Positions 4,245 through 31,389 of a DNA stretch of 64,000 bases are shown here, one piece after another (within the stretch, counting starts at the first letter, position 1; the number at the start of each line of letters is the position of its first letter). Under the pieces are notes generated by a model, which saw only the letters and a program-made list of their open reading frames with translations, searched no databases and was not told where the DNA came from. Both the position numbers and the translations under genes were made by a program. Origin of the DNA: Octopus bimaculoides (taxonomy: Eukaryota). The DNA lies in NCBI RefSeq assembly GCF_001194135.2, contig NC_068985.1, forward strand, positions 118,323,515-118,387,514, read 5' to 3'.

Positions 4245-4321
<77 letters not shown>

Positions 4322-6236: not shown

Positions 6237-6253
6237 AGCATGGGAAATACACA

Positions 6254-6286
<33 letters not shown>

Positions 6287-10299: not shown

Positions 10300-10600
10300 A
10301 ATTATACTCTTTCACTTAGCCTATCATATTAACCCCTTAACATCACATAACAGGCAGTTTTCATTTAGCCTCACACTAATCTTGGATTTAGACAGTTTTC
10401 ATTTAGCCTTTCACACTAACCACACATCATAGGCAGCTTTTATTTAACCTCTCAAACTCACCCTACATTATAGGCTACTTTCATTTAACCTATAACATTA
10501 ATTTCATATAGGCAATTTTTATTTAGCCTATTCCATTAGTTTCACATTGTAGCAGTTTTCATTTAGCCTATCACATTAACTCTGCATTAGAGGCAACCTT
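10300..10600. repeat. Degenerate ~40-bp minisatellite
   Basis: Recurrent aggcagttttcatttagcct..cacactaa units, about 7 copies. Confidence 0.75.
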
Positions 10601-11307: not shown

Positions 11308-11344
<37 letters not shown>

Positions 11345-12048
11345 TACGGTGTGTATTAAAGTATACTTCTATATTTTTGCACACATTAACTGCACAATTA
11401 TTTGTTAGATACTGAATAAAGTGACACACATATTTATATATGCATGCATGTATGTGTGTATTATTACGTATAATTGCATTATTTGTTCTAAACTATGCGT
11501 AATTAACAAGCAAGTAAATAGAAATATGTTTGGAGACAGAGAAAGAGAGAGAGAGAGAGAGAATTATTGTAGTTCCACTAGGTCATAGAAAGGAGGCAAA
11601 AATGCCGATTTCGTTCAATGTACTGACGTGTCGAGACCACTTTGTGTGTGTGTGTGTGTGTGTTACATGAACACTAATAACAGCTGTTACTTCAGTTTTT
11701 ATATCCTATTTTGCCTGTCGGTCTAAAAACCTATTTTTGTCAAATCAGTGAATAATTTGGTCTCTGAACATACTGTATAAAATATAAATATATTCCCCTT
11801 TCTGTTTTTATTTACTAATCAACATGATATTGTTCTCACTAACTTCTTGATCAAGACAAAAAACAAAAACGCGCAAAAACAAAGTAGAATTCTAGAGTGA
11901 AATAGGAAAAAGAAAATCTCTCCTATTGTGTGTCACTGTTTGCTGAGTGAGGAATTGCAGATTTTGTGACTTTTTTTTTTTTTTTTTCACATTTGGACCT
12001 AAAATACATGACATACAACCAAGGACACTTTTATTACCAGGTATCCAG

Positions 12049-12114
12049 GATGAACATTGACGATTATTTCAGTGATAAAAACAAACATATTCAATTGCCA
12101 TGGGAAGATACATG
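12049..12114 (+). CDS. PICK1: Putative PICK1 alternative exon (66-nt in-frame cassette, or alternative first exon from ATG 12050): MNIDDYFSDKNKHIQLPWEDTW
   Basis: CCAG acceptor at 12045-12048, open frame, strong TG|GTGAGT donor at 12115. Phase 2/2, so in frame between exons 1 and 2. No transcript evidence. Confidence 0.5.
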
Positions 12115-14930
12115 GTGAGTAAGAAAACAAAACTAAACAAACTCAAAGAAAAATTACTCCAGAATTTCTCTTTTCGTGTTAAATTATTTGTTTCGTCTGA
12201 TGAAAACCAGACAAAAAATAGGAGACAATTTGCGCATTAGAATGGTATGAAAAGGGTTGGTGGGAGTAAAAATTTAAAAGAAAATCAACACTCTTTTTGG
12301 GGAAAATAATTTAGAATCAGTTTCTCTTGTATGAAACAGATGAATAAATAAATGAAAAAGGAATGTGTATCCGTTCTTTCCCTCACTGAGACTTGGGAGT
12401 TTGAAGGTACAGCTATTCAAAACTCCGCCGAAAATATGTTTATTGTCACTAAGTTAACAATTGTAAGGTATAATACTGCAGATTTGTTTTTAAAAAGACT
12501 AAAAGGAAAGGACAATTTTACACACTTTTAGATAATGTTAATAGTGACTAGGTTAATAACTGTTGAAAAAGTTTGGTCAGAAAACAAGTTTTCATCTCTA
12601 ACAACTCGTAAAATAGCTTTTAAGTTGATAATCCGTAAGTTTTTTTTTTTTTAACTACGGATTATCATCGTTATTGTTATTTAACTGGAGGTCAACCTTG
12701 ATTGAAAAAAATCTATGAACGACCATCTCATTTTTTAAAGGGTATCTAGGGAGTACATTATCCAATGTATTCATCCTTGTATAATACAGTGAGGTTGATT
12801 TGAAGGAGAATTGGCTGTTATTTCTCGCAGGTTGAGCCAACCGCATTGAAGCTCCCTCGTTAGACATAAAGACCAATGATTGTTGATTCTTTATGGTTGG
12901 GGAATGTGGAAGTTTTGATGTTCTTTTTTTTCCCAAACAGTATGAAACTTATGAATCAATAACACGTTTTGAAAATATTCTTTACAGCCTGTTATATCCT
13001 ATCTTTACTGACTGCTTGTGCTCGTTAACTTACCCGATTAAGTAAACGTTAACAACTTTCATATATTACGTTGAACTCTTTTACAGCATGCATTATTTAG
13101 TTACGGCTCTTTACGTTCCGAGTTCAAATCTCGCTGAGGTGAACTTAGCATCTCATCCCTTCAGCATCGATAAAATAAAGTAACCGTATTTGATGGCGTT
13201 TAAGAACTTTTTCCAGAAAGACGCCTCATAAATCATCCCGAGTCCTATATGCGAGTTTGGATTTCCCATTAGCTTTAAGGATCTAAAACAATTTCTTTTT
13301 CATTCTGGAATATATCCTGCCAAAATTTGTTGCGTCGAATATGTCCATGCATCTTTTATGCCTTCAAATACGGCACTGGCCTGGTAATGGGGTCTATTTA
13401 ATCGACTACCCTGTCCTACCATCGCCCACTAAATTTTCAAGTCTTGCGTCTATATTAGACACCGTTGTATTTATCTTTAATTCCATTGCTCCCTAAATGA
13501 TAGGAAAACCAAGTTGGGGGAAATTTTATGTTGATGGAGAGTGGTGGGGGGTGTAGAGTAATGGTTACACATGTACTAAGTTGTCACTTAGAAATTTATG
13601 AGAGTCAACTTTCGCAATTAAGTTCTATTGTTTAATATTCTTAGATTAAATAGGGTTCTAGCAGGTACAAGACAGAAAATCCTTTGTCTAGCCTTAAAAA
13701 AATATATATAAATACTGAACACGAATTCGGTTTTTCCTTCTTTCTTTTGGCGCTGATGGAGGAAGCACCTGATGCGAGGGCCAATACAACTTTCACCCTC
13801 TCTACTTGTCTACACAGACAGGTAGACCCTCTTACTTTTTCTCGCTCTCCTTTTTCCACCAGTCGTCTAGCAGTTATTCACAGACGAAATTAACTACCTA
13901 CAGAATGGATAACAGAACTAATAATAATATGTGTATAACAACAACTCAAAGAATTTGTATCTTACACTGTAACGATAAAAATAAAGGGCCATTTCAATCA
14001 ACAATATTTTCCTTCCTCTTATTTATTTGATGAATTATTTATGTAATTCATCACAATTTTGCTGGCCCCTTGCTACATATCATTACAAATGTTTTGTCAT
14101 TTACTTGTATATGATCACCAGTTTCCAATGATGTGAATGGTTATCCTACATGTTGGTCATAATGTTCCTTTATCAGACTTTGGCACTTAGCATGTCCATC
14201 CTGAACATCCAATAGATTTTTTGTATGTGGCAGAAGTAACCACCTTCACAAAGGTTTTCCTTTGTTACTGTTGTCTATTCCTGGTTGTAGTTAAGACAAC
14301 AATGAAAGGTGTTCAAATTGTGATAACCATATCATTTGTATATTAGGACCTATATAGTTCAATAAAACCTTTATTTAAGACAGTAAAATATAATTTGTGA
14401 GTTTTGGCTGCTATTTTCTGCAGATTAAGTGACCATCTGATAGCTCCCTGTTGAACAAAACAGTTAATCAATCAACAACTCTTCTTCTGTCTTACATTTT
14501 CTATTTCATATCTTCAGAATAGGTGGCTGAACTTACAAACCACTTAATTTATTATTTCAGTGAAGGGGTTGCCTTTAAAGACTGGGTTTGGGCTTATTTA
14601 CATAGGGAGGGTGATAGAATGGGAGATTTTTTTAACAACACATGTTCATAATGATATGCTAACACTATTATTAAATTTGTAAACTCCCAAGGCACTTTAT
14701 AATGTGTCTGTCACATTCTCCCATTCTTGCCTTTGTGACAATAATAAAGAATTCATCATCATCATTATTATTCATTACACTCTGAGTTCAAATCCTGTGG
14801 GGGTCAGCTTTGCCTAAAATATAGTGCCAGTCAAGTACTAGAGTTGATAGTCTCAATAGACTTCTTCCCCTTAAAATTGCTGGCCTTGTGCCAAGGTTTG
14901 AAAGAATGATGATTGTTATTAACTACAGAG

Positions 14931-15092
14931 ACTACACTCTCTGAGTGGTTGGCGTTAGAAAGGGCATCCAGCTGTAGAAACTCTGCCAAATTTAGATTGG
15001 AGCCTGGTGTTGCCATCCGGTTTCACCAGTCCTCAGTCAAATCGTCCAACCCATACTAGCATGGAAAGCGGACGTTAAACGATGATGATGAT
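14931..15092 (+). mobile_element. Repeat family C copy
   Basis: Nearly identical to 25017-25187. Confidence 0.8.
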
Positions 15093-15099
15093 TAACATA

Positions 15100-15770
15100 G
15101 CAGAGCTGGCAGAATTGCTAGTATGCTGGGCGAAATGCTTAGTGGTATTTCATCTGAATTTATATTCTGAGATCCAGTTTCACTGAGGTCGATTTTGCCT
15201 TTCATCTTTTTGGGGTCAATGAAATAAGTACCAGTTGAGCACTAAAGTTGATGTAATTGACTAGCCCCTCCCCAAATATTTCAGACCTTGTACCTATATA
15301 CATAGAAAGAATTACTATTATTATTAAGGTGGTAGATAGGCAGAATCATTAGAGCATCGTCGTAAAAAATATTTTTTGGTATTTGTTCCAGCTCTTTACA
15401 TTCTGTGTTCAGATCCCTTCATGGTCAACTTTGCTCATGGTCAAATACTAGGATCAATAATATAAAGAACCAGCGAAATCCTGGGGTTGATGGTACTGAC
15501 TAACCTCCTCCCTTCAAAAATTGCTGCCATGAGCATCAATTAGAAACCATTATTATTTGGGTGGTGAGTAGGCAGTCATTAGAGTGTCAGACAAAATCTC
15601 TAGTGGTATTTTGTTATGGTACTTTACATTCTGAGTTCATATCTCTCTGGGGCCATCTTAGCCTTTCATACCCCTTCAGTCAATAAAAAAAGAAAACCAG
15701 CCAAGTATTGGGGTTGATGATATCAGTCAACCTCTTCCCCTAACAATTACTGACCTTGTCCCCAATCTTT
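15100..15770 (+). mobile_element. Three adjacent decayed copies of SINE-like family B
   Basis: Three head-to-tail homologues separated by ATT-rich linkers, with CpG sites decayed to TG/CA. Confidence 0.7.
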
Positions 15771-15951
15771 TATATGAACCCTCAGTGATTAATAAAGAAA
15801 AGATTATAATTATAAGTATAATTATTATTATTATTATTGAGTGTGAGAACAGTGCATACCATCAAAGTGACACTGGGGTACAAATATATGAAGCCAAAGA
15901 AGATCAGAAGCCATATGAGCCAGTGCCTGGTATTGCATTATTATTAATATT

Positions 15952-15996
<45 letters not shown>

Positions 15997-16854
15997 GAGG
16001 GAGAGAGCAGTGCATGCCATCAAAGTGACGCTGGGGTCCCATCATGACTACCCATCTGATAAGGGTACACCAGGCACAAGCATCACAACCATATATATGT
16101 GACATGGTGATTTTATATCAAGATATAAAATGCATGAATTTGCAGGTGGGACCCAGTTAGAATCTTTCTCAGGTTGAGTAGCCCATCCTGCTCAAAAGAT
16201 TCCTGAATAAAGTTTGTTTAAGGACGATGAACAAAACTACCCATGTTTCCAGAGGTGAATTATTCAAACCTCAAAGAATTCCTATCAACACACAGCTATG
16301 ATGTGCCCCCACTACTTTTGCTTGTGGTTAGAGATGGACATATCATCAGCCACTAAGGAACATGCTCAACTGGTTGAGGTCAAGCAATTAACAAACAAAT
16401 CTGTGGTATTGAGCAGAATATTTGTTGCAGCTCATCTTTTACACCAAGACAAAACAATGTACATGGTAATACTTCCAATCAGTTAAGATCAGAAGCCAGT
16501 GCCTGGTACTGCATCAGGGCATTTATTATTATTATTATTATTATTATTTTATGTTTGACTTTGTTTTGCATTTGTACAAGTTGGATCCAAGTCTCACTCA
16601 GAGACCTCAAGAGACAACAAGTTAGAAGTTCATGTAGGTGTTATGCCTAGGGTACCATATATTTGGATTTGTACAGTTTTGTTCAAGTGAATGTTTAAGA
16701 AACCATAAGAAAATTATGTGTTTGCTTTAAAATTTGAGATCACNNNNNNNNNNNNNNNNNNNNNNNNNNNNNNNNNNNNNNNNNNNNNNNNNNNNNNNNN
16801 NNNNNNNNNNNNNNNNNNNNNNNNNNNNNNNNNNNNNNNNNNNNNNNNNNNNNN

Positions 16855-16896
<42 letters not shown>

Positions 16897-16916
16897 GAAT
16901 GCTATTTCTTTTTCAG

Positions 16917-17157
16917 GGGTATGACTGTGAGTTCTGGTTCTGTGACGCTCCAGAAAGATGCCCAAAATCTCATTGGAATTAGTATTGGTGGAGGTGCACC
17001 TCTGTGTCCTTGTCTCTATGTGGTCCAAGTGTTTGACAACACTCCTGCAGCAAAGGATGGCCAGTTAGCTTCGGGTGATGAAATTGTTGGCGTCAATGGA
17101 CAGACTGTTAAAGGAAAAACCAAAGTTGAAGTCGCCAAAATGATTCAAGCCATCAAG
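16917..17157 (+). CDS. PICK1: PICK1 coding exon 2, PDZ domain
   Basis: GMTVSSGSVTLQKDAQNLIGISIGGGAPLCPCLYVVQVFDNTPAAKDG...KTKVEVAKMIQAIK matches the PICK1 PDZ, with KD and CPC motifs retained. TTTTCAG acceptor; AAG|GTAAAC donor. Confidence 0.97.
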
Positions 17158-17199
17158 GTAAACTCTAAGCTATTCAAAAGAAAGCACTTGTAGATATAA

Positions 17200-17200
17200 A

Positions 17201-17286
<86 letters not shown>

Positions 17287-17295
17287 ACAGTTGTA
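17200..17295. repeat. Compound (AGT)n(AGC)n microsatellite
   Basis: Seen directly. It explains the poly-L, poly-Y and poly-C ORFs in the track. Confidence 0.95.
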
Positions 17296-18429
17296 GCAGC
17301 ACTTGGTGTTGATAGTGGTGGAGGTGATGTTTAGTCTTAGGAGAGTCTTGATTGAGGTGACCTGCGACCAAAAGTATTGTAGGTACACTTAATTTGCTGT
17401 CTGCTCTATGGTGCCTTTACGTAAGGTCCAATCTATTGCAAGCATTCATGTAAAATCAATGATGTGAGAATAACTTTCTCCCTCCTTATCACCAATCTCA
17501 GAAGTCCTGAAAAGGATTATGGGTGTTGACTCCTCTCTCTTTGACTTATCATCATCATCATCATCATTTAATGTCAGTTTTTCTGTGCTAGGTGGGTTGG
17601 ATGGCTTGATAGGAACTGTCGGAAGATTTCACCAAGCTCTGCTGTCTGCTTTGGCATGGTTTCTATGGCTAGATGCCCTTTCTAATGCCAACCATTTTAT
17701 AGAGTGTACTGAGTGCTTTTTTCACCTAGTAACTTGCAACACAAGACCCTGCAACTGAAATGGGGAGTAGTATTGAAGGACAGGAAAAAGTGTCTTGTAT
17801 TAGAGAGGACCTGTGACCAAAAGTATTGCAGGTACACTTAATTTGCTGTCTTCTCCATGGTGCCTTTACTATAACCCTGGGCTGACTGATTCCTTATGAG
17901 TTGCTTAGATAGATGGAAACTGTAAAAAGCCTATTGTATATGTATGTATATGTGTGTGCATACTTGTTCAGCTGTGAAGGATGACATTGCTGTCATCTGC
18001 TGGCTTTCCTCTTTTGACGATGTGTAGAATAAGATATCCCTTACTTAAGAAACAGGTCAGGATTAATGACAGAGTGGGCATCTGGCTGTAAAACAATGCT
18101 TCAACAATATATTTGCATAACCCATGTTTGCATAGGAAAGCAGATATAAGAATGAATGAATAGATGTATGTGTGTGTTTGAATGTTGATATTTAATGCTT
18201 GTCACCTCTTGAGGGAAACAGTAATGATTTCTTTCATAGGTCATTGATTTCATTAACCAGTAATTATTGTTCAAATTCTGCCAGAGGATAATTAAGCTTA
18301 CTGTACCTCTTCCTCTAAATATGTGACATTGTGTCTGTGTTAGAAATTGTTATTGCAGTTGTTGTTATTTAACGTAAGAAGGAAGTTAGTATATGTCTTG
18401 TCTGTCTGTCTATCCTTACCCACTTTGAC

Positions 18430-19700
18430 CGATCCCTACTTCCTTTAACTGTTTATCTTCTATTATCTGATCTCTACTCCTTTTATCTGATTCTAATTTC
18501 TTTGCCTGATCCCTAGTTCCTTTGCTTGCTCTCTACTTCCTCTACATGAACCGCTTTTTATTTACTCCCTAGTTTCCTTGACTGGTCCCTAATTTCTTGG
18601 ACTGATTCCTACATATTTTGACTGATCTCTACTTCTTTTATCTGATTCTAATTTCTTTGCCTGATCCCTACTTCCTTTGCTTGCTCTCTACTTCCTCTAC
18701 ATANNNNNNNNNNNNNNNNNNNNNNNNNNNNNNNNNNNNNNNNNNNNNNNNNNNNNNNNNNNNNNNNNNNNNNNNNNNNNNNNNNNNNNNNNNNNNNNNN
18801 NNNNNNNNNNNNNNNNNNNNNNNNNNNNNNNNNNNNNNNNNNNNNNNNNNNNNNNNNNNNNNNNNNNNNNNNNNNNNNNNNNNNNNNNNNNNNNNNNNNN
18901 NNNNNNNNNNNNNNNNNNNNNNNNNNNNNNNNNNNNNNNNNNNNNNNNNNNNNNNNNNNNNNNNNNNNNNNNNNNNNNNNNNNNNNNNNNNNNNNNNNNN
19001 NNNNNNNNNNNNNNNNNNNNNNNNNNNNNNNNNNNNNNNNNNNNNNNNNNNNNNNNNNNNNNNNNNNNNNNNNNNNNNNNNNNNNNNNNNNNNNNNNNNN
19101 NNNNNNNNNNNNNNNNNNNNNNNNNNNNNNNNNNNNNNNNNNNNNNNNNNNNNNNNNNNNNNNNNNNNNNNNNNNNNNNNNNNNNNNNNNNNNNNNNNNN
19201 NNNNNNNNNNNNNNNNNNNNNNNNNNNNNNNNNNNNNNNNNNNNNNNNNNNNNNNNNNNNNNNNNNNNNNNNNNNNNNNNNNNNNNNNNNNNNNNNNNNN
19301 NNNNNNNNNNNNNNNNNNNNNNNNNNNNNNNNNNNNNNNNNNNNNNNNNNNNNNNNNNNNNNNNNNNNNNNNNNNNNNNNNGTTCCTTTGCTTGCTCTCT
19401 ACTTCCTCTACATGAACCGCTTTTTATTTACTCCCTAGTTTCCTTGACTGGTCCCTAATTTCTTGGACTGATTCCTACATATTTTGACTGATCTCTACTT
19501 CTTTTATCTGATTCTAATTTCTTTGCCTGATCCCTACTTCCTTTGCTTGCTCTCTACTTCCTCTACATAAACCGCTTTTTAGTTACTCCCTAGTTTCCTT
19601 GACTGGTCCCTAATTCCTTGGACTGATTCCTACATATTTTGACTGATCTCTACTTCTTTTTTGACTCCCTACTTCTTTTGCCTGACATCTACTTTATCTA
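18430..19700. repeat. 155-bp CT-rich tandem repeat (partly in N gap), PICK1 intron 2
   Basis: tgatctctac anchors at 18468/18623 and 19489/19644 (spacing 155). Built from shorter tgatccctacttc-like sub-repeats. Confidence 0.9.
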
Positions 19701-20802
19701 ATCTCTTCTTATTTTGTCTGATCTTAATTTCTTTTCATTGGTCCCTCTTCATCTGTTTGCTATTTCCTTTGCCTGATTCCTTGTAATTTTCTCTGGTCCT
19801 TATTTTCTTTCTTTCACCTTTACTCTTTTTTCCTTACCCCTTTTGTCTGGTCCCTACTTCTGTGTCCAAATGATGTTCACCAACACTTTCATCTGAAGAG
19901 CTTTATGTATTGTTGCTTAACTCTAATTTCATGTCATTAACCTAATAACAAACAAAGTTCAATATAGAGAGGACTCCTTTGTATCTCTGACCCATGCTCA
20001 ACAGCCAGGTAAAATGTAGAATTATTTACAAAATCAGTGCTAATATTTCTTTGTATCTAGGTAGAATATACTACCTAAATACATGAAAGTACACTTGCTG
20101 GGTCTGATGGGGCAGTGGCTTTGGTGTTCATAGGTGTAGTTGATATCATTAATGTTCCACTTGAACTGCCGCAAGTTGACAACTGCAGGAAAGACATGAG
20201 CAGAGAAGAGATTTCAGGGGCTGACATTCTGAGGAGACCCAGTTTAGACTGAAATACACATGTGTACTTGGAATTTAATGATTTGTTTTTTTCATGAAAT
20301 AAACAAGTTTGCTATTAAATTTTAATAATGAATGTCATGAAACAGCTTAGCATGAAATAAATTATTGTCATAGAAATCAAACAAATGGACTAATCAAAAA
20401 TTAACTGTGTTTGGTTTTGCTTATGTTACATTCCTGACATATAAACTCTATTCAGTCTCTTCCAAGTCTCCCTGATTGCAGTTGTAGCTTGTAAAGTGAA
20501 ACCTGTGGTTTTATTTTCTCATTCCTGAATGCAAATTACAGTTGCATATGGTGGTTGTTGTATTGGGTTTCCTGCTACACCCAATGCCACCAAATTTCAT
20601 GGGTATAACAAAAGTTTTCCATTAAGATTTGTGTTTAAATTAATGAGTATGGTTAATATTTATAATGAATTTGCCATTTTCAATGAGTGTGCAGTCCACA
20701 CCTAGCACACTTGGAATATATGCACCTGGGAAATTATCTTAACCAATGTAAACAATCATATGTTCTACAATATAACTAGACTTGTTAAACATTTTTTTTT
20801 AG

Positions 20803-20869
20803 GGAGAAGTCACAGTTCATTTCAATAAACTTCATGCTGACCCAAAACAAGGGAAATCATTGGACATAG
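20803..20869 (+). CDS. PICK1: PICK1 coding exon 3 (GEVTVHFNKLHADPKQGKSLDI)
   Basis: Homologous to human GEVTIHYNKLQADPKQGMSLDI. AG acceptor and GTAAGT donor; frame consistent. Confidence 0.95.
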
Positions 20870-22781
20870 GTAAGTAAAGTGTTTTTATTTATAACTATTC
20901 ACTGGAATTGTGGAAGCTTGCTGGGTTGTAGAGAAAGTAACGATGCTTTTTTTTACTGTTTCCTATATATTGAGGTCCAAATTTTGTTTAAACAGATGAC
21001 AAACCTCAAAGAAGGTTAAATGCATCTGCAGTGATGACATTCATCTTGCTCCGATATATATATATATATTGTTTTTGATACATGTCCACAAAGAGATTTT
21101 TATCTCAGACAACTTCACAGCATCATTGACTTTCAATGGTGTGTATAATTTAGTATGATACGCAGATGACAATTTTAATCTAATACTGCTTTAATTCTGT
21201 ATGCAAGGTCTTATTTATATATTCTATAATAGTAATGTGGTACTTTGATTGTGTGATTAAGGTACTTGACTACTGCCCAAATGGCCATAAGTTCAAATCT
21301 TTCTTTAGCCAGTGTGATGTACATGTGATTAAAGGACATAACCTGTTTGCTTCAATTGGTGTGGCTGATAAAAACCTTGTCTTCAACTTCACAAATGGTA
21401 GGAAATGGATTTGCTTATAGAAACAAATGCTCCAACGAAGCAAATAACTGTCCTATCCTTGTAAACCTGAAAAATTGTATGTAAAACAGAGAAAAAGTAT
21501 TACTGAAATATTCAGATCTTTTCTTATGTGTTCTGGTAGATTAAAAGAATTTTAATAAGCGGAAAATTGAACTGGAGATTGAGGCTTTCCAGTACACAAA
21601 AGTTTAGTGACATGTACTTTAGTACTATGATTTTTTAATAGTGACAAATACTAACTAGTACCCACCACCTCAACAGAAAATTAGTGAAATAGTTGCCTCT
21701 TCTCTCTTTGTTACAGAGAAGACAAAGATTTTGCTTCCATATAAGTCTTTCTTGGTGTCAGACAAGTTTAAAACGTTTAAACATGTCTTGATTTTATGGA
21801 ATATGGCAATTTGTCTGCTCCCTTTTCTTAGTGTTCACAGCCTCCTTCCCTGTGAGAAATGCTGCTTTGATATTCCTTGTTTTCTGATAAAATAGAATAT
21901 ATATGAGCAGAAGATCATTTCTTGGCATTTTAGATTCATTCATATGATATAATGAATGGAGGGCAAGTTTATTGATCTATTGTTGTGATATATTGTATCA
22001 TGAAGTGGGGGAGATAATAGAGTCACTATAAACTGAAGGGTTAGTATTTTGTTTTGATCACCAGTGTTGTACTGAGATGAATTTTAAAGATATTTAACCT
22101 TCAATGTCTCAGTTTATCAAGTTGTAAGCAAGACTTAGTGTTTTTTACCTGGGACTATGTCAACCAATGTATCCTTTTTTTCTAAGATAACAGCCTGTCA
22201 CTTGAAGAAGGTTTGATTAACCTGCCAGCAGATTAAGTGATAACATTGAAGGTTCCTTATTGGTAATTGTGTTGTTGAATAGCTTTAGGTCATCTCTGAT
22301 CCAACAGATTAATGAAAGGGAATCCAACCAGGACCATTCCATCCTCCTCCTAGACATAGTGGTTGTTTTTTTTTTAAGAGAGTAGATGTGTTATGCGGAG
22401 CATTGGCTGCAATTTCTTGCAGATTGAGCAACCATATAAAGATTTCCTTATTAACATGTGAAACTATCCCAAAGTGCAGACTGTGTCCCTAAATAAACCA
22501 TATTAACTCTTTCAGGCCTAGTCAATCATGTGACAAAATACCAGATGAAATTATATTGTTCTTATAGGTTATAAGACATTGTACTTTCAGAAATATCCAA
22601 CCATGTCAGCACTGTAGAATACATTTAAAACCTTTAAAGAAGAAAATGCATGTTTTAATGATTTATACTTTTGAAATATTTTGGAACAAATTGATATTTT
22701 TTTTAATGAAGTGTTCTTCTGTCATGATTTTGTGTTCATGTCATATTATGTGGTTTTCTGCTTTTGTTTTATGTCTTCTAG

Positions 22782-22871
22782 TATTGAAAAAGGTCAAGCA
22801 TCGTTTTGTGGAAAATATGAACTCCAACACAGCAGATGCTTTAGGGTTAAGTCGAGCCATCTTATGCAATG
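22782..22871 (+). CDS. PICK1: PICK1 coding exon 4 (VLKKVKHRFVENMNSNTADALGLSRAILCN)
   Basis: Near-identical to the PICK1 linker. TCTAG acceptor, G|GTAAGT donor. Confidence 0.96.
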
Positions 22872-25001
22872 GTAAGTTCATCTTATTTGAAGTATTTTGT
22901 GTATGTTTGAATTTTATTGATGTGCATTTAAATAGGTGCAGGTGTAGTTATATGGTTAAGAAGTTTTCTCCCCAACTACATGGTTAAGTCCTACTGTGTG
23001 GCACCTTGGAATAGTGTCTTCTACTATAGTCCAGGGCCAACCGAAGTTTTGGAGTGGATTTGGTAAACAAAAACTCTAAGAAGCTGTGTGTGTTTGTGTG
23101 TGTGTGCATTTGTATCTCGGTGTCCTGACATTCTGGGTTAGTTGAGAATGTGTATCACTGTCATACAAGCAGTGTTACTCATTTCCAGTATTCTGTGGGT
23201 TGCCTGAAAACAGGTGAGGGCTAGTGACAGTATTTTAACACTTTGAAATGGTCATTGTTTTAACCAGGTCCATTTTGGATAATAAAACTGTTATGCTGTG
23301 TAGCTCCATCATTGTTTAAATGTTAAAGAACAGTTACTTTGATGAGACTAACCATATTTTCATCGTTTTAATCATTATTATAAGGTATTTTATGCACTCC
23401 CATTGAACACCTTTCTCTATTTTAGTCAAACTGTAAACAATTCATGTCTGTACATGTAACAGTTTTGTAAAACCTACAAAACAGTGGTTCCCTAAAATAT
23501 TTTGTCTCAGAGACCTTATACAATTTTCCAAATTATTATTTTGTAAAATACATTTTTATTAAATTTTATTAAAAGACTTATTTCACAGAATACCAGAATG
23601 TTTTCATGAAACCTACTTCAAAGAAACAGTGCACTAGAAAACTGGTACCTCCACCTGTATTCAATGTCATTATCTAGGTTTATAGAAATGGTGATTCAGA
23701 TCATAGAGTAGCAGACTAAATGCATTGTAGTTTTGAGTTCAAATCCTGCTGAGGTTGAATTTGATTTTCATCCTTCATGGATGACAAAATCAGTACTTGA
23801 TTTGGTCAGGTGAAGTCTTTTCAATCACAAAAAATTGGTCTTGTACCTAAGAAAGAAATTTATGTCCATTATCATCTTTCAATAATAGTCTTTTGCACAT
23901 TTTACGATCTGTTATTATTGCATACAACATAATGAGCTAACAAAGGAGACCTTATGTAGTTGTTTGACCTGCTAGTAATAACAGCCAAATCTACTTCAAT
24001 TCACACCTTAAAAAAAAGGACACATTGATTGTAGTTGTAGGTACACTGAAAAAATGGAATAGTCGAAACACCTTTGATCATAAGTCTGTTGGACTAGGGC
24101 TAGCTTGGGCTAAGCAATAACTAACATGTTTCACACATTTTTAAAACATTACAATTTGGGAGGGAAAATTTTCTCTATGAAATATAAAGAGTACTTTTGT
24201 AATATATTTATGTTATATCTAGTTGGTGGCAAATTGGCAGAATTTTGATAGCATTGCATTGATTGCCTCATGGTATTTGTTCTGACTGTCTACATTCTGA
24301 GATCAAATCCCTCTGGATCAACTTTGCTTTTCATCCTTTTGAGGTTGATAAAAAAAATACCAGTTCAGAGCAGTATTAATATTTGGTGAAACTGTAAATC
24401 AGGATGTCAAATTAAATGTTTTGTGGAATTTGTTCTGGTTCTCTGTGTTCTGAGTCAAATTTCATCTAGGTGCCTAAAAAGTGCCCTTACCAACCTATAG
24501 AGTTAATATAGTAAGTAAGGCAAATTTTTAAAATAAAGGCCAACACCAAATAGATAATACTGGATAGAGTTGAGGGAGAAGTGAATGAAATATCTAGTAA
24601 CTGGAAAATACAATACAACTAATCTGAGCAACTACACCATCTAAGAATGTTGGCTTTTTTATTGTCTATGAAGTAATAGAAAGTCTGCAACAGGACTGAC
24701 CTGTGGATTGCTAGAATCAATGACCAGAATGCTTTGTGGTATTTAGTTATAGTCCTTTACATTCTGAATTATAGTTATTAAGTTATAGTCCTTTACATAC
24801 CTTAGTCAACTTTGCCTGTCACACTCTAGAGTTGATAAAATAAAGTACCAGTCAAGTACTGAGGTTGATCTAATTGACTAACTCCTTTTCTCCAAATATT
24901 TGGCCTTATGTCTGTATTATAAATTATCTCTGAAGTAATAGATAGTCTCCATGGAACTAACCTAAATTGACATTCTATTTAAGAATATTTATTTATTATC
25001 T

Positions 25002-25187
25002 ACGTAAAAGCACCCACTACACTCTCTGAGTGGTTTATGTTAGGAAGGGCATCCAGCTGTAGAAACTCTGCCAAATTGGATTCGAGCCTGGTGTTGCCAT
25101 CCGGTTTCACCAGTCCTCAGTCAAATCGTCCAACCCATGCTAGCATGGAAAGCAGATGTTAAACGATGATGATGATGATGATGATGA
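25002..25187 (+). mobile_element. Repeat family C copy, inverted relative to 27991-28177
   Basis: Near-perfect reverse complement of 27991-28177. Confidence 0.8.
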
Positions 25188-25293
25188 ATAGATATAATAA
25201 AGGAATGCCCATCAGGAAAAGCCTTAAAGTCTGAATATGTGTAATTTGTGTCATCTTTTTACATTTTCTGATAAAATTTATTTTGTTTTGCAG

Positions 25294-25410
25294 ATGGGCT
25301 TGTTAAGAAACTGGAAGAACTAGAAAAAACTGCTGAGATGTACTGTGGCTTGATTGAACATGCTAAAAGGCTATTGAAAGCAACATTTGAACTATCTCAG
25401 TCATATAAAA
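25294..25410 (+). CDS. PICK1: PICK1 coding exon 5, BAR domain start (DGLVKKLEELEKTAEMYCGLIEHAKRLLKATFELSQSYK)
   Basis: Homologous to human DGLVKRLEELERTAELYKG. TTGCAG acceptor, GTAAGT donor. Confidence 0.95.
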
Positions 25411-26110
25411 GTAAGTTTGCATCTAAAAACAAACCTCCTCATAAATTAACATACACAAATAATTTTGGTAATTAATTATATTTGTACTATTGATAGGCAT
25501 GAAGCAGAGAAATAAAATAATTTGCCATTTAAGAATACAATTAAAGTATATTGATGTAGAATTATAGATCAGTAAAACTGATAAATTGGATCAACAATGA
25601 AGAGGCAGGGGAAAATAACCTTCATTTATTCTTTTCTTACTTTCTTTTTCTCTACTCCTTCACCCTGTCTCACATGCACACATACAGTCTGATGCTTGAT
25701 AATATAGTGATAAGTATTCCTGCCTATCATAAAGAAGACAGAGTTGTGCCTACAACCTTCTCAGGCTTTCCAAGACCAGTGAGATTGACATTGTTGATAT
25801 TCTTCATGAGTAAGTGCAAGTTGACAGTATAGGGATGGAATTCCCTTCTGGTGAGAAAGGTCTGGAGTGAGTGATTAGTGGAACAGAGACAAGGGAATCA
25901 GGTGAGCTTGAGTGAAGATGGTATGAGATCAGCCAACTGTGAAGAGTTGTAGCAAGAGAGGAAGAGTGAGGGGACAGTATAGCCATGGGCTGGAAGTTGG
26001 AGTGTGTGAATGGACATGGGTATGCTCAAAGAAGGGCGACCTGGGGCTAAATAACAATAACAACTAAACTTGTTTTGGATATTTTAAATATTTCAATTAT
26101 CTTGTTTTAG

Positions 26111-26244
26111 CCTTTGGAGATGTCTTTGTTGGCATTGGAGTGAGGGAGCCTCAGCCCAGAGCCAGTGAGGCATTTTCAAAATTTGGTGAAGCTCACCGTG
26201 ACATGGAGAAGTTTGCAATAAAAATGATACGAACAGTCAAACCT
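26111..26244 (+). CDS. PICK1: PICK1 coding exon 6 (TFGDVFVGIGVREPQPRASEAFSKFGEAHRDMEKFAIKMIRTVKP)
   Basis: Homologous to human AFGDVFSVIGVREPQPAASEAF. TTTTAG acceptor, GTAAGT donor. Confidence 0.96.
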
Positions 26245-27028
26245 GTAAGTGGCAGTGATTTATTTTTTAAAGATTTCATCTTTTTTATTATTTTACATCA
26301 ACTGTTTTAGAATTGACATGTTTCATGTATTGTTAGAATGAGTATTTTTAGCTTTCTCTAATATATCTTGACCTGTTGATCATTGACTTACAGCTGAAGA
26401 ATTTGTCTTCATGAAATTAAAACAAGCTAGCTTGGCAGAGCCTATCTTATATGTAATTAATCCCAGCTAATTCATTAATTTTTGTGATACCACTCATAAG
26501 AGCAGTGAATTGGTTCTATCTTGTGACACCTCCTTACAAGTAAATGGACTATGCTATTTAGAATCAAGTGTCATGGTTATGAATATGATACAGGAACCTT
26601 GTGCATAATCCAAACTATTAACCTTATTCAATATTAAGTACTTAATTATAAAATGGAACCAATCTGGTCCACAACTAATCTGCATTCAATATGTGCTTCA
26701 TTATCTTCTTTAGTTATTTTCTTGACTAGTAAAGGGTCATGCTGTAATGATTCAACTGTTGACTTTAACTTACTTGCTCAGTCTTAAAACATGGTAGTTA
26801 GATAGCGATTTATATTAAACCAACATTAAATGTTGATTAAAGAATTTTTATGTAATTATTGTGACTTGTAGTAGCTGTAGTTTTATTCATTAGCCGTTTT
26901 CTGTCGTAGCCTTTTCTTGTAACATTATAAAAATGTTTGAAAATGCTATGTACTATTGATACTTTGTTGTTCATCATATTTATATATCTTCTTGATACAT
27001 ATAATATCTATTAATTATTGTTTTATAG

Positions 27029-27121
27029 ATGATTTGTGACTTACACACCTTTCTCAACAAGGCAGTACCAGATACTCGTCTTACAATCAAGAAGTATCTA
27101 GACTCTAAATTTGAATATTTG
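27029..27121 (+). CDS. PICK1: PICK1 coding exon 7 (MICDLHTFLNKAVPDTRLTIKKYLDSKFEYL)
   Basis: Homologous to human MLTDLNTYLNKAIPDTRLTIKKYLDVKFEYL. First of four repeated TTG|GTAAGT donors is at 27122. Confidence 0.95.
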
Positions 27122-27293
27122 GTAAGTCTCTGGAGTTTAATCTACTCATTTATAGTTATATCTACTGAATATTTGGTAAGTCTCTGGAGTTTAATCTACT
27201 CATTTATAGTTATATCTACTGAATATTTGGTAAGTCTCTGGAGTTTAATCTACTCATTTATAGTTATATCTACTGAATATTTGGTAAGTCTCT
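27112..27293 (+). repeat. Perfect 54-bp tandem repeat (3 units + 20 nt) spanning the exon 7 donor
   Basis: Unit TGAATATTTGGTAAGTCTCTGGAGTTTAATCTACTCATTTATAGTTATATCTAC starts at 27112, 27166 and 27220, with a partial copy at 27274. Confidence 0.97.
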
Positions 27294-27990
27294 TGTTTAT
27301 TTTCTAAATTAAAGTAATTCTATGTTTGAGTACAATTAGATCTGATATGTGGATTTACATCACAGATGTTTTACACATGCTGTATGTGCATTTTTTTACA
27401 GTTATATCATGTTTTTGTTTCTGGAAAATCTCATTAAATCAATGACTAAGTTAATCAAACATAGATTAGGTGTTTATTACCCCATGCAGGTTTATGTAGT
27501 CAATAAAAGATAACTGCATTTTTTTTTTTTTTGTTTTCGGCATTCAAATTTGCAACAACTTACTGACAGAGTCTTTAAAAACCCATAAAAAACTGGTTTA
27601 CCCTGAAGACCAAAATAGTCATTAAATATAAGTTACATAGCTGTGAATTTGTAAAAGAAAAGATCAATTATTTTTCTCAGTAAATTCATATGTACTTGTA
27701 ATTCCCCTATGATACCAAAAGGGTTTCCCATGCCTGATCTACAGTGTTTCACTTTACATCATGAATGCCTTTCAGAAGAGTATCAGAACAGCCAAGATGC
27801 AGTACGGACAGTATAATTCAGACTGTTTAATATCAAGTCCGCAACTCAGCATTATGCATATCTGTATTGTTGATGAATAAAGGAGATTATATCACTTGTA
27901 CAAGGATGAACAAAGGAGATTAGATCATGTAAGTAGGTATTTGCATGCGAATACCTACCTACAGGACTTAACAGAAATATGGCTTATAAC

Positions 27991-28452
27991 TTCATCATCA
28001 TCATCATCATCATCGTTTAACGTCCGCTTTCCATGCTAGCATGGGTTGGACGATTTGACTGAGGACTGGTGAAACCGGATGGCAACACCAGGCTCCAGTC
28101 TGATTTGGCAGAGTTTCTACAGCTGGATGCCCTTCCTAACGCCAACCACTCAGAGAGTGTAGTGGGTGCTTTTACGTGTCACCCGCACGAAAACGGCCAC
28201 GCTCGAAATGGTGTCTTTTATGTGCCACCCGCACAAGCCAGTCCAGGGGCACTGGCAACGATCTCGCTCGAAAATCCTACAGGAGCCAGTCAGGCGGTAC
28301 TGGCAACGGCCACGCTCAAAATGGTGCATCTCATGTGCCACCCGCACAAGAACCAGTCCAGGGGCACTGGCAACGATCTTACTTGGCTTGCCGGGTCTTC
28401 TCACGCACAGCCCATTTCCAAAGGTCTCGGTCCGTAGTCATCGCCTCGGTCA
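27991..28452 (-). mobile_element. Repeat family C with (GAT)n tail (SINE/RTE-type 3' end) and internal sub-repeats
   Basis: On - strand ends ggaaagcggacgttaaac(gat)n. Homologues in the opposite orientation at 25002-25187 and 14931-15092; decayed same-orientation copy at about 17548-17725. Confidence 0.75.
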
Positions 28453-28975
28453 GTTATTAATGTTCTTATAGAGATTGATGATGTTTATATTCTTTAAATC
28501 ATTGGAGTTGCAGCATTTGTCCCAACACTGGTAAAAACTAATGTTAATGTATGTGTCTGTGGCAGCTTCATAACCTTTTCAATCATAGAAGTGCCATTTC
28601 ATGGAGGACAAATAAACTTACAAGAGTGGCCGATCCTTCTCTAATAGACACAATGCTTTGTCAGTAATAGTATATTCCTGGGATAATTGTTTAGTACCCT
28701 GTTAATGTAACCATTAGCTCCGTATCCTGAAGACATAGTCATTAACATAATACCCTATTGATGAAACAATTAGCACAGTACCCTATTGATGTAACCATTA
28801 ACACAATACTCTTTTAATGTAGCCATTAGCACTCTGGTATTAGAAGTAGGTGAAGTTAAGTACCTCAACTGGAAATTAAAGCTTTATTGTAGACTTGACT
28901 TTCAGAGAGTTTATTAACACTGTATTGTACTTCCACCTTAGCAAAATGACTGGTTAACATGTATTTTTTATGTAG

Positions 28976-29076
28976 TCATACTGTCTTAAGCTGAAAGAAA
29001 TGGATGATGAAGAATACAGTTACGCTGCTCTTCAAGAACCACTTTACCGAGTTGAAACTGGCAATTATGAATATAG
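28976..29076 (+). CDS. PICK1: PICK1 coding exon 8 (SYCLKLKEMDDEEYSYAALQEPLYRVETGNYEYR)
   Basis: Homologous to human SYCLKVKEMDDEEYSCIALGEPLYRVSTGNYEYR. TGTAG acceptor, AG|GTAAGA donor. Confidence 0.96.
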
Positions 29077-29330
29077 GTAAGATTTCAGTTTATTTTTATC
29101 TTGCTATTTTACATTCTTCCATCTTATTTAAGACAGTGGATAGAAGAATTATTAGAACATTGTATGAAATATCTTGCAATAATTAGATGCAAACTTTCTC
29201 CTGAGATAACTACTAAAATCCAGAACATTTGGTAGCTCAAGCTGGTTGTAGGCCTGTGCACCACCGTGAATTATGGGAAGAAAACTCCAGAATTTACCAA
29301 CTCACTCCACGACACTAACCTTAAGAAGTT

Positions 29331-29780
29331 TTGGGTAAATGTCACTATATTGTTATGGTCAACAATGATCTGCGTTGGCTGAGCCATATTTCTAAAATTG
29401 GCAAAAAGACTGAACGTATCCTAGCATTACTCAGTAACACCTTTGTCAGCTACTCACCAGCTATCTATTTAAAGCTATATATGGTTATGGTATGTCCACA
29501 TTTTGAGTTTGCATCTCCAGTCTGGAACCCCTATCTTGTCCAGAATATCAGTCTACTACAAGCTGACCAGAGACGTGCAACTCGACTAATACTCTCTTTT
29601 AGTCACTCACCATATCTTGAATGTACTGCCTCTGGGCATCAACATGCTAAAGTTTCAATGTCTAGCAGCTACCTGGAAGGATCTCTCAAGATTATCCACC
29701 ATCTTTCTAACAATAACTTTGGCCCCTTTTTCAATTCAATCACTCATGGACGTGTTTATAAAATAAAAAACAGTGCAGTA
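29331..29780 (+). mobile_element. CR1/L2-like LINE RT C-terminal fragment in PICK1 intron 8
   Basis: DLRWLSHI...LY..MVCPHFEFASPVWNPYL..I.LL..QRRATRLI motif. Confidence 0.75.
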
Positions 29781-30021
29781 CCCATGACTTTCAGCAACGT
29801 TGTTTCATGCTGTATTTCTTTACTTGGCTTATGTAGCTGCTTTCTGTTCCCACTTTTAACTTTTTCTGATGAATTGTAGTGCACTTGAGCACTATGTACA
29901 ATAAGTTTATTATCACATTTTACCACTGACAGCAATGCAACCTTGTAGAACCTCTACTGTTGGTAATTGACTTAATCCCTTACCCCAAATTTCAGGCTTT
30001 GTGTTTCTAGTAGAAGAATTA

Positions 30022-30025
<4 letters not shown>

Positions 30026-30100
<75 letters not shown>
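30026..30100. repeat. (ATT)n microsatellite just upstream of the exon 9 acceptor
   Basis: Seen directly. Confidence 0.95.
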
Positions 30101-30101
<1 letters not shown>

Positions 30102-30125
30102 TCTCCTTTAACTCAATATCATTAG

Positions 30126-30220
30126 ATTGATCCTGAGATGTCGCCAAGATGCTAGGACACGTTTTGCTAAAATGCGCTCAGATGTTTTGGTCAAGATAGA
30201 ATTATTGGATCAGAAACATG
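30126..30220 (+). CDS. PICK1: PICK1 coding exon 9 (LILRCRQDARTRFAKMRSDVLVKIELLDQKH)
   Basis: Homologous to human LILRCRQEARARFSQMRKDVLEKMELLDQKH. ATTAG acceptor, G|GTATGT donor. Confidence 0.96.
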
Positions 30221-30529
30221 GTATGTGATTTAAAAGAAATTTTTTTTTCCAAATTTATTCTTCTACTCCTGAATTGTTTCATAAAAAATCAAATACAGTA
30301 AGATGAAATTAAATAACCTGAATGGATGATTCAGCTTTTATTTCTAGCTGATATTCTTCAGCAACAGATATTCCCCAATTTACAAGACACAATCTAACCA
30401 GTTTAGGTTGCAAACATTCAGGGATGATTATAAGTGTATGTTGTTCCTGTCAATATAGCCACTTGTTATTGTAGGTGGATCCTCTATTTGACACCTGCAA
30501 GTGTTTCACAAATGTGTGTGTATATATTT

Positions 30530-31050
30530 ATGTGGGCATAGCTGTGTGATAAGAAGTTTGCTTCCCAACCACATGGTTCTGGGTTCAGTCCTGGCACCTT
30601 GAGTAAGTGTCTTCTACTATAGCCTCTGGCCAACCAAAGCCTTGTGAGTGGANNNNNNNNNNTGGTACAGTATTATATATTTGAAAAAATGAATAGAAAT
30701 GGCTTTTCTGATCATTTTCTCACTTTAATAATTAGGTGTTTAAACTTATAACCATCTAAATATTAAAGTGGAAAAATTTTCAGAAAAGCCATTTCTATTC
30801 ATTTAAAAAATATATATATATGTGTGTGTGTGCGTGTGTGTGTTTGTTACCCACCTTTTGCTTGACAAATGGTGTTGGTTTGTGTTTACATCCCTGTAAC
30901 TTAGTGGCTCAGCAAAAGAAACTTATAGAATAGGTACCGGGCTTAAAAAACAATAAGTATTGGGGTTGATTTGTTCAACTAAAGTACTTCAAGGCCGTGT
31001 CTCAGCATGGCTGTAATCTAATGACTGAAACAAATAAAAAAATAAAAGAT
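30530..31050 (+). mobile_element. SINE family A copy, CpG-decayed, PICK1 intron 9
   Basis: Homologous to 40905-41280 with CG changed to TG/CA. Confidence 0.7.
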
Positions 31051-31123
31051 ACATACACACACACATGTGCGCACAAATACTAATGTATCCATAAACCAAA
31101 TGTTTTTGTTTTTTATCTAATAG

Positions 31124-31389
31124 TGCAAGACATTGTATTTCAACTGCAGCGATTTGTATCAGCCATGTCTAAATATCACAGTGACTGCCATTCAGTAATG
31201 AAAGAAGCTGTAGTTTTCCCAATTGAAGTTGATTTATCTCGCAGCACTCTGACATATGACCATTCCAATGACTTTAACGATGATGATGGAGATGAAATTG
31301 AAGAAGGTGAAGAAGCAATGGCAGATAGATTGAACACTGAGCCTGTTGACAACAATACTGGCCTAATTGACCTCATGACTGCTGACTAA
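31124..31389 (+). CDS. PICK1: PICK1 coding exon 10, BAR end and acidic tail to stop (VQDIVFQLQRFVSAMSKYH...FPIEVDL...TGLIDLMTAD*)
   Basis: Homologous to human VQDIVFQLQRLVSTMSKYY...DVFPIEVDL. AATAG acceptor, TAA stop. The ten exons sum to 1251 nt (416 aa). Confidence 0.96.

What the first reader, a model, noticed from the sequence alone, without database searches (positions are those of the whole stretch)
27112..27307. Perfect 54-bp tandem repeat gives PICK1 exon 7 four identical in-frame splice donors
The repeat unit includes the last 10 exonic nt and the GTAAGT donor, so identical TTG|GTAAGT donors sit at 27122, 27176, 27230 and 27284. 54 is a multiple of 3 and the unit has no stop in the exon frame. 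Use of donor 2, 3 or 4 would insert 1-3 copies of the hydrophobic 18-mer VSLWSLIYSFIVISTEYL into the BAR domain, between the TIKKYL and LKLKE basic patches that bind lipid in mammalian PICK1. Read-through to the TAA at 27305-27307 would give a truncated PICK1 with a hydrophobic tail. The units are identical, which suggests a very recent and possibly polymorphic VNTR that could tune isoform output.
Basis: partly seen in the sequence, partly recalled or inferred. Interest (0 to 1): 0.75.

Follow-up and report, generated by a model that had tools for sequence, protein, structure and literature searches.

The report
Octopus PICK1 intron repeat copying splice donor
In the Octopus bimaculoides genome, a species-specific 162-base repeat just after PICK1 exon 7 adds three exact extra copies of the splice donor, but every known transcript model uses only the original donor, so it looks like a young structural variant and not a working isoform switch.

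Summary
Window 27112-27293 is a perfect 54-bp x 3.4 array. It gives four identical TTG|GTAAGT donors (27122, 27176, 27230, 27284), and the unit is in frame and stop-free.

The gene is Octopus bimaculoides PICK1 (exact match to XP_014790259.1). At the same site, O. vulgaris, O. sinensis and Argonauta hians each have one donor. Relative to O. vulgaris and O. sinensis, O. bimaculoides has exactly 162 extra bases. That insert is three copies of a 34-bp filler of unknown origin plus a 20-bp copy of the exon/intron junction. The filler occurs nowhere else in the 2.34-Gb genome.

Nothing supports use of donors 2-4:
- All three RefSeq isoforms and the UniProt model join FEYL|SYCLKLKE, which only donor 1 can produce.
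- No protein in the searched public sets carries the 18-mer.
- The insertion would split a sequence block that is invariant across 32 bilaterian PICK1 proteins, in the middle of a BAR-domain helix.
- Being in frame and stop-free is expected by chance about 15% of the time.

One tension remains. In mammalian experiments, strong donors at least 45 nt apart are spliced from the downstream one, and here the upstream one is annotated.

Most likely this is a young, possibly polymorphic intronic minisatellite carrying decoy donors. Its copy number comes from a short-read assembly and is unverified. Interest is modest.

The parts
3554..31389 (+). PICK1 (PRKCA-binding protein) coding region. Exons: 3554-3633, 16917-17157, 20803-20869, 22782-22871, 25294-25410, 26111-26244, 27029-27121, 28976-29076, 30126-30220, 31124-31389 (stop included).
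   Evidence: tblastn exon map and splice-site check. The spliced product is identical to XP_014790259.1 of Octopus bimaculoides.
27029..27121 (+). Coding exon 7 (MICDLHTFLNKAVPDTRLTIKKYLDSKFEYL), phase 0 at both ends.
   Evidence: The exon boundary after KFEYL also shows in exon-7 read-through ORFs from other animals.
27112..27293 (+). Perfect minisatellite: three 54-bp units (27112-27165, 27166-27219, 27220-27273) plus a 20-bp partial unit (27274-27293). It can equally be read as a 162-bp insertion at intron position +11.
   Evidence: TRF, direct comparison of units, and an exact 162-bp gap in O. vulgaris and O. sinensis.
27122..27127 (+). Donor 1 (GTAAGT). It is attached to the authentic exon and is the only donor consistent with the annotated proteins.
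27176..27181 (+). Donor 2, an exact decoy copy. Its use would add 18 aa.
27230..27235 (+). Donor 3, an exact decoy copy. Its use would add 36 aa.
27284..27289 (+). Donor 4, the intron-proximal copy. It is followed by the ancestral intron sequence, and its use would add 54 aa.
27132..27165 (+). Orphan 34-bp filler Y (GGAGTTTAATCTACTCATTTATAGTTATATCTAC), copy 1. Copies 2 and 3 are at 27186-27219 and 27240-27273.
   Evidence: These are the only three occurrences in the 2.34-Gb genome at <=3 mismatches. Y is absent from the orthologous loci, and the window holds no local template of 11 nt or more.
27305..27307 (+). First in-frame stop (TAA) if the intron is read through.
28976..29076 (+). Coding exon 8 (SYCLKLKEMDDEEYSYAALQEPLYRVETGNYEY-R), the shared acceptor for all four donors.

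Best explanation
This is a young, Octopus bimaculoides-specific minisatellite inserted at position +11 of PICK1 intron 7.

Inferred history: the ancestral junction (...TGAATATTTG|GTAAGTCTCT TGTTTATTTTC...) acquired a 54-bp insertion. That insertion was a 34-bp filler of unknown source plus a second copy of the 20 bp spanning the exon/intron boundary. The two 20-bp direct repeats then allowed replication slippage or unequal exchange to amplify the unit to three perfect copies.

The exon and its own donor are untouched. The result is three exact decoy 5' splice sites lying 54, 108 and 162 nt into the intron. Productive PICK1 mRNA is made from donor 1, which alone keeps the authentic exon sequence upstream. 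The decoys are silent or minor.

Because the unit happens to be in frame and stop-free, any decoy use would escape nonsense-mediated decay and put 18-54 hydrophobic residues into BAR helix 2. The array is therefore best seen as a neutral to mildly harmful, possibly polymorphic structural variant, not an evolved isoform switch.

What is shown: the array, its lineage specificity, the orphan filler, and the canonical junction in all annotated products. What is inferred: the order of events, that donor 1 dominates in animals carrying the array, and the fitness effect.
For: The array and its donors are exactly as described.

The window is O. bimaculoides GCA_001194135.2, chromosome contig C5 (assembly size and scaffold count match the table in PMC10700109).

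O. vulgaris (L009) and O. sinensis (L010) have a single junction copy and an exact 162-bp gap, with about 95% identical flanks. Argonauta hians (L014) also has a single TTGGTAAGTCT donor.

Filler Y occurs only in this array genome-wide and has no local template.

The window's spliced product equals XP_014790259.1. Isoforms X1, X2 and X3 all read ...KFEYLSYCLKLKE....

No protein with the 18-mer turned up in three searches: 5.8 billion clusters for lengths 184-586 aa, the same set for 51-161 aa, and 1.84 billion representatives.

K265-Y288 is almost wholly invariant in 32 bilaterian PICK1 sequences. The junction lies inside the modelled helix 214-293, where pLDDT is about 68-82.

The stop-free, in-frame property is expected by chance at about 15%.

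No RNA structure distinguishes the donors (z = -0.17).
Against: In mammalian cells and extracts, two strong 5' splice sites at least 45 nt apart are spliced almost only from the intron-proximal site (Hodson 2012, PMC3413131). By that rule donor 4, not donor 1, should win. The annotated donor-1 junction therefore needs either an exon-context effect or animals or alleles that lack the array.

Gene models can lean on protein homology, and I could not see any junction reads.

The assembly is short-read based (713,915 contigs). A perfect 182-bp array may exceed what its reads could span, so the copy number is unverified.

Polarity rests on one sister lineage (O. vulgaris plus O. sinensis) and on a distant outgroup whose intron cannot be aligned.
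Confidence: 0.55

Rival explanations
1. One reading: donors 2-4 are really used. They would yield PICK1 isoforms with 18, 36 or 54 extra hydrophobic residues in the BAR domain, or a truncated read-through form. Copy number of the array would then tune the isoform mix.
For: The four donors are identical at -10..+10 and strong, with 8 of 11 matches to the U1-complementary consensus, as good as or better than most donors of this gene. The unit is in frame and stop-free, so the products would escape nonsense-mediated decay. The mammalian proximity rule predicts that the downstream donor is used at spacings of 45 nt or more. Eighteen residues equal five alpha-helical turns, so the helical register on either side would be kept (inference).
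Against: No annotated isoform and no protein in the public sets carries the insert. The insert would split a block invariant across bilaterians, in the middle of a long helix and between the lipid-binding lysines. The sister species lack the array. The coding-like properties are expected by chance at about 15%. The inserted peptide comes from orphan filler with no relatives.
Confidence: 0.15
2. Assembly product: the copy number, or the whole insertion, does not exist as written in the animal. A perfect tandem array longer than the reads forms a loop in a short-read assembly graph, and gap closure may have fixed an arbitrary number of turns.
For: The assembly is a fragmented short-read one with 713,915 contigs, and the window holds 12 N gaps. 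The units are 100% identical, and this is the only such array in 264 kb sampled. All transcript-based models fit a single-donor gene equally well. Two better-contiguated sister assemblies show no unit.
Against: The 34-bp filler is new sequence, not a copy of the flanks, so reads containing it must exist. An overlap or gap-closure error duplicates flanking sequence only. The array contains filler-junction-filler joins, which implies at least two units in the reads (inference from how such graphs are built). The array is not next to a gap: the nearest are 18704-19381 and 30653-30662. Perfect long-period arrays are not a recurring feature of this assembly.
Confidence: 0.2
3. The decoy donors act as an intronic U1-binding platform. 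Extra U1 snRNPs just downstream of the real donor would strengthen definition of the short 93-nt exon 7, or protect the 1.85-kb intron from premature processing, without themselves being spliced.
For: A 5' splice site placed downstream can recruit SRSF1 and U2 components like an exonic enhancer (PMC8724738). Several U1 snRNPs can sit on one pre-mRNA and the surplus ones are later removed (PMC3413131). The annotated mRNAs use donor 1 despite three strong sites downstream.
Against: The sister species splice the same exon without the array, and their own donor is already strong. Nothing here shows any benefit, and the published data favour splicing from the downstream site, not mere enhancement.
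Confidence: 0.07

Closest known systems
Intronic minisatellites / VNTRs (units of 10-100 bp)
   Same: Head-to-tail copies of a 54-bp unit, located in an intron, lineage-specific, flanked by a direct repeat that can drive slippage, and with perfect unit identity that fits recent expansion.
   Different: The unit includes the last 10 exon bases and the donor, so each copy is a complete strong 5' splice site in the reading frame. Polymorphism among individuals is not shown.
Experimental pre-mRNAs with duplicated strong 5' splice sites (globin constructs of Cunningham/Eperon; C174C in Hodson 2012, PMC3413131)
   Same: Identical, strongly U1-complementary donors in tandem, competing for one acceptor, with a spacing (54 nt) above the 45-nt threshold studied there.
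   Different: This case is natural and not engineered. It has four sites and not two, and it is in a cephalopod with a 1.85-kb intron. The annotated outcome (upstream site) is the opposite of the published mammalian outcome (downstream site), and it has not been verified with reads.
Alternative 5' splice site exons
   Same: Several GT donors share one acceptor, and all choices are frame-preserving.
   Different: No transcript evidence for more than one donor, no conservation in related species, and the added peptide has no homologs.
PICK1 orthologs of other cephalopods and bilaterians
   Same: PDZ plus Arfaptin/BAR architecture, the same exon boundary after KFEYL, and 71-90% protein identity among the 32 aligned orthologs, with near-identity to O. 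vulgaris.
   Different: Only O. bimaculoides carries the array after exon 7.

Membership tests
PICK1 / PRKCA-binding protein gene | Encodes an N-terminal PDZ domain plus an Arfaptin/BAR domain, orthologous to annotated PICK1 | tested here: met
   The spliced product is identical to XP_014790259.1. Its close relatives carry PF00595 (PDZ) and PF06456 (Arfaptin).
Minisatellite / VNTR | Head-to-tail tandem copies of a 10-100 bp unit | tested here: met
   Period 54, 3.4 copies, 100% identity.
Minisatellite / VNTR | Copy number varies among individuals | not testable with these tools
   No reads or second O. bimaculoides assembly could be reached. The assembly holds no alternate empty-site haplotig.
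Minisatellite / VNTR | Absent or different in related species (recent origin) | tested here: met
   O. vulgaris, O. sinensis and Argonauta hians each have a single junction copy, and none has the filler.
Alternative 5' splice site exon | Two or more usable GT donors upstream of one acceptor | tested here: met
   Four identical TTG|GTAAGT sites, each with 8 of 11 matches to the U1-complementary consensus.
Alternative 5' splice site exon | Transcripts or proteins that show use of more than one donor | tested here: not met
   RefSeq X1-X3 and the UniProt model all have the donor-1 junction. No insert-bearing protein was found in the public sets.
Alternative 5' splice site exon | Alternative donors conserved in related species | tested here: not met
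   Single donor in three other octopod genomes.
Transposable-element insertion with target-site duplication | Inserted sequence present in other copies in the genome | tested here: not met
   The filler occurs only in this array at <=3 mismatches in 2.34 Gb. The 182-bp array matches only itself.
Assembly artefact at a closed gap or contig overlap | Duplicated sequence derives only from the flanks and lies next to a gap | tested here: not met
   34 of every 54 bp is new sequence. The nearest gaps are 7.7 kb upstream and 3.4 kb downstream.
Assembly artefact at a closed gap or contig overlap | Reads fail to support the stated copy number | not testable with these tools
   No read data could be reached.

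The most novel reading that the evidence does not exclude
The array is real in living O. bimaculoides and reveals something about splice-site choice. One possibility is that octopus spliceosomes ignore three perfect strong donors 54-162 nt downstream and use the exon-attached one, the reverse of the mammalian proximity rule. The other is that a share of PICK1 in this species carries an 18-54-residue hydrophobic insert in the membrane-binding BAR helix, with the amount set by a polymorphic copy number.
Probability: 0.2. Interest if true: 0.6.

Novelty: new member of a known kind. Interest (0 to 1): 0.3.

Why it matters
PICK1 is a deeply conserved trafficking protein of synapses and secretory granules. 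The stretch around this junction is invariant from octopus to vertebrates. A natural allele with four identical, evenly spaced, frame-preserving donors is a ready-made test of how a non-model spliceosome chooses among equal 5' splice sites: by exon context or by proximity to the acceptor. It could also be tested as a length variant that leaks aberrant protein past nonsense-mediated decay. If the array turns out to be a short-read assembly product, that matters for users of this widely used reference genome. As it stands it is a well-documented, lineage-specific structural variant with no shown function.

Tried and rejected
- **Transcript evidence from the same species.** Exact look-ups of the O. 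bimaculoides proteins (P0121, P0127) found no contigs. The first O. vulgaris look-ups (P0001, P0002) also failed. The locus was then retrieved with the longest isoform, P0124.
- **Array or empty-site ORFs in other samples.** The 92-aa read-through ORF found only exon-7 fragments from other animals. The 38-aa empty-site ORF is not on record. The Logan contig L035, from another Octopus sample, covers only the last exon.
- **Origin of the filler.** It is not a dispersed repeat, not templated from the window on either strand, and not present in the orthologous loci.
- **RNA structure masking the decoys.** Rejected: the fold is no better than shuffled sequence (z = -0.17).
- **Known RNA families at the array.** Rfam finds none.
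- **A second, mutually exclusive exon 8**, as hinted by a cuttlefish model. It is absent from this window.
- **Weak hits of the array peptide in the representative library.** They are unrelated repetitive ORFs.
- **Assembly paper and older splicing papers.** The 2015 genome paper and the Eperon 1993/2000 and Roca 2013 papers are not held. The k-mer size and read lengths of the assembly therefore remain unchecked.

Full report
**What is there.** Window 27112-27293 is a perfect tandem array with period 54, 3.4 copies, 100% matches and no indels. Direct reading shows three identical 54-mers followed by the first 20 bases of a fourth. TTG|GTAAGT has its donor G at 27122, 27176, 27230 and 27284. 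In the frame of the upstream exon the unit reads VSLWSLIYSFIVISTEYL with no stop, and the first stop on read-through is TAA at 27305-27307. The other five frames of the array are closed. All coordinates in the finding are right.

**The gene and the organism.** A tblastn probe and splice-site inspection give a ten-exon coding region on the + strand, 3554-31389. The repeat-bearing exon, 27029-27121, is coding exon 7, and the next exon starts at 28976. The spliced product is letter for letter XP_014790259.1, PRKCA-binding protein (PICK1) isoform X2 of Octopus bimaculoides. The window is C5:118,323,515-118,387,514 of a 2.34-Gb assembly in 145,327 sequences. That size and scaffold count match O. 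bimaculoides GCA_001194135.2, which has 713,915 contigs and is therefore a short-read assembly later scaffolded to chromosomes (PMC10700109). The window has 12 N gaps, and the ones nearest the array are 18704-19381 and 30653-30662.

**Comparison with relatives.** I retrieved the orthologous loci of three species:
- O. vulgaris (L009, GCA_951406725.2; the genome paper reports ONT whole-genome reads),
- O. sinensis (L010, GCA_006345805.1),
- Argonauta hians (L014).

Both Octopus species read ...AAATTTGAATATTTG|GTAAGTCTCT TGTTTATTTTCTAAATT..., with one donor and an exact 162-bp gap relative to the window. The flanks are about 95% identical. Argonauta also has a single TTGGTAAGTCT, followed by an intron that cannot be aligned.

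The array is therefore specific to the O. bimaculoides lineage, or to the sequenced animal. It is also not a simple duplication of ancestral DNA. Each unit has two parts. X is a 20-bp copy of the junction (TGAATATTTG|GTAAGTCTCT). Y is a 34-bp filler (GGAGTTTAATCTACTCATTTATAGTTATATCTAC) that the sister species lack.

Y occurs only three times in the whole genome at up to 3 mismatches, all within this array. The 182-bp array matches nothing else. No stretch of Y of 11 nt or more is found elsewhere in the window on either strand or in the Octopus and Argonauta loci, apart from a single chance 11-mer. The source of Y is unexplained.

**Reading of the anatomy.** The insertion can be placed at intron position +11. 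Exon 7 and its own donor are then intact, and three exact copies of the donor lie 54, 108 and 162 nt downstream. Donor 1 keeps the ancestral exon on its 5' side. Donor 4 keeps the ancestral intron on its 3' side. A likely history (inference) is a 54-bp insertion of filler plus a second X, which created X-Y-X. The two 20-bp direct repeats then drove slippage or unequal exchange up to three units.

**Age.** Perfect identity bounds the age only loosely. Alignable parts of intron 7 differ by about 5% between O. bimaculoides and O. vulgaris, which split about 34 My ago. That gives roughly 7e-10 changes per site per year, and zero changes in 182 bp then means an age of less than about 20 My at 95%.

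**Is there evidence that donors 2-4 are used?** None that I could find.
- The three O. bimaculoides RefSeq isoforms (X1 P0127, X2 P0121, X3 P0125) and the UniProt model all read ...DSKFEYLSYCLKLKE.... On this genome only donor 1 can produce that junction.
- The exact +18 and +54 aa isoforms are not in the 15-billion-protein collection.
- A region-restricted search with the read-through product found no protein of 184-586 aa with the insert at E <= 10.
- A search with the 92-aa genomic ORF (candidates of 51-161 aa) returned only exon-7 read-through fragments from other animals.
- An exhaustive HMMER scan of 1.84 billion representatives gave three unrelated repetitive ORFs.

These are absences.

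**What an insert would do.** The junction falls between L274 and S275. Nearly every position from K265 to Y288 is invariant or nearly so in an alignment of 32 bilaterian PICK1 proteins. It lies between the lysines reported as the membrane-binding residues of the BAR domain. Those are human K251, K252 and K257 on one side and K266 and K268 on the other, corresponding to octopus K264, K265 and K270 | K279 and K281 (PMC7873044).

An AlphaFold2 model of the canonical protein is only moderate overall (mean pLDDT 62, modelled as a monomer). It places the junction inside one continuous helix, residues 214-293, with local pLDDT about 68-82. The 18-mer is strongly hydrophobic (Kyte-Doolittle mean 1.4). 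An insertion here would most likely damage the fold. Because the unit has no stop, such mRNAs would not be cleared by nonsense-mediated decay (inference). The frame-preserving, stop-free property is not evidence of selection. 44% of random fillers from this window give a stop-free unit, and with a one-in-three chance on length the combined chance is about 15%.

[quoted passage not shown] It is about 100% at 45 nt or more, and a distal site goes unused when both are strong (Hodson 2012, PMC3413131). The four donors here are equally strong, with 8 of 11 matches to the U1-complementary consensus, at least as good as most donors of this gene. They are 54 nt apart, and no RNA structure sets them apart (z = -0.17). 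By that rule donor 4 should win, yet the annotation shows donor 1.

Possible resolutions:
- Exon sequence next to donor 1 dominates in vivo.
- The RNA came from animals or alleles without the array.
- The gene models lean on homology.
- The array, or its copy number, is an assembly product.

**Is it an assembly artefact?**

Against:
- The filler is new sequence, which overlap or gap-closure errors do not create.
- The array is not next to a gap.
- It is the only 100%-identical array among about 57 arrays with period >=20 in 264 kb of this assembly, so such arrays are not a recurrent artefact type.

For:
- The assembly is short-read.
- A perfect 182-bp array may be longer than the reads could span.
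- No alternate haplotig is present.

I judge that an insertion of at least two units is probably real in the reference animal. The exact count of three is unverified.

**Verdict.** The interpretation as an isoform-tuning device is not supported. The best reading is a young, lineage-specific and possibly polymorphic intronic minisatellite that happens to carry complete decoy donors, with productive splicing from the original donor (confidence about 0.55). The rivals are an assembly product (0.2), real use of the decoys (0.15) and a U1-recruiting enhancer role (0.07). In kind it is a new member of a known class: a minisatellite, or duplicated splice sites. It would be worth one look at junction reads and one PCR, because the outcome bears on 5' splice-site choice in a cephalopod.

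Noticed in passing
window 19949-20008 (+): The counterpart of the 20-aa cassette exon seen in O. vulgaris PICK1 isoforms (QTNFNVERTPSHLGPGLNSQ, between exons 2 and 3) reads QTKFNIERTPLYL*PMLNSQ here. It has an in-frame stop, so it is non-coding or a poison exon in O. bimaculoides.
   Followed up: partly
window 12008-12115 (+): Alternative first coding exon of PICK1 isoform X1 (MTYNQGHFYYQVSRMNIDDYFSDKNKHIQLPWEDTW), a 100% match. It lies between the MISE... first exon (3554-3633) and exon 2.
   Followed up: partly
window 37189-37444 (-): Full-length match to the metazoan signal recognition particle RNA (RF00017, 190.9 bits, E 1.5e-50), ending 9 bases from an N gap (37453-37784). It could be a real SRP RNA gene or an SRP-derived repeat.
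   Followed up: no
window 48720-48790 (-): A tRNA match (RF00005, 66.7 bits), just downstream of a 313-aa open frame (47445-48386, +) that looks like part of a retroelement.
   Followed up: no
window 38150-38241 and 49270-49337: Two interstitial arrays of the telomere-like hexamer in opposite orientation: (GGGTTA) about 15 copies and (CCTAAC) about 11 copies, roughly 11 kb apart.
   Followed up: no
window 61616-62371 (-): A 251-aa open frame with a cysteine-rich motif (...CCSDGKVKLP...QNSKHFQNKIRQYNAAQQMTSFGA...), probably derived from a transposable element. It was not searched.
   Followed up: no
window about 27900-28500 (middle of intron 7); 28-bp repeat at 28740-28832: About 600 bp in the middle of intron 7 cannot be aligned between O. 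bimaculoides and O. vulgaris (about 50% mismatches), while both ends of the intron are about 95% identical. This suggests a lineage-specific replacement or insertion. The downstream part of the intron holds an imperfect 28-bp x 3.3 repeat.
   Followed up: partly
protein P0005 (Acanthosepion pharaonis model); no counterpart in window: One cuttlefish PICK1 model contains a second, diverged exon-8-like segment (SYCLRVKEMDDEQIEYISYQTSLYTVSSGNYAYR) in tandem with the normal one. This hints at duplicated, perhaps mutually exclusive, exons in cuttlefish. tblastn finds no such copy in this octopus window.
   Followed up: partly
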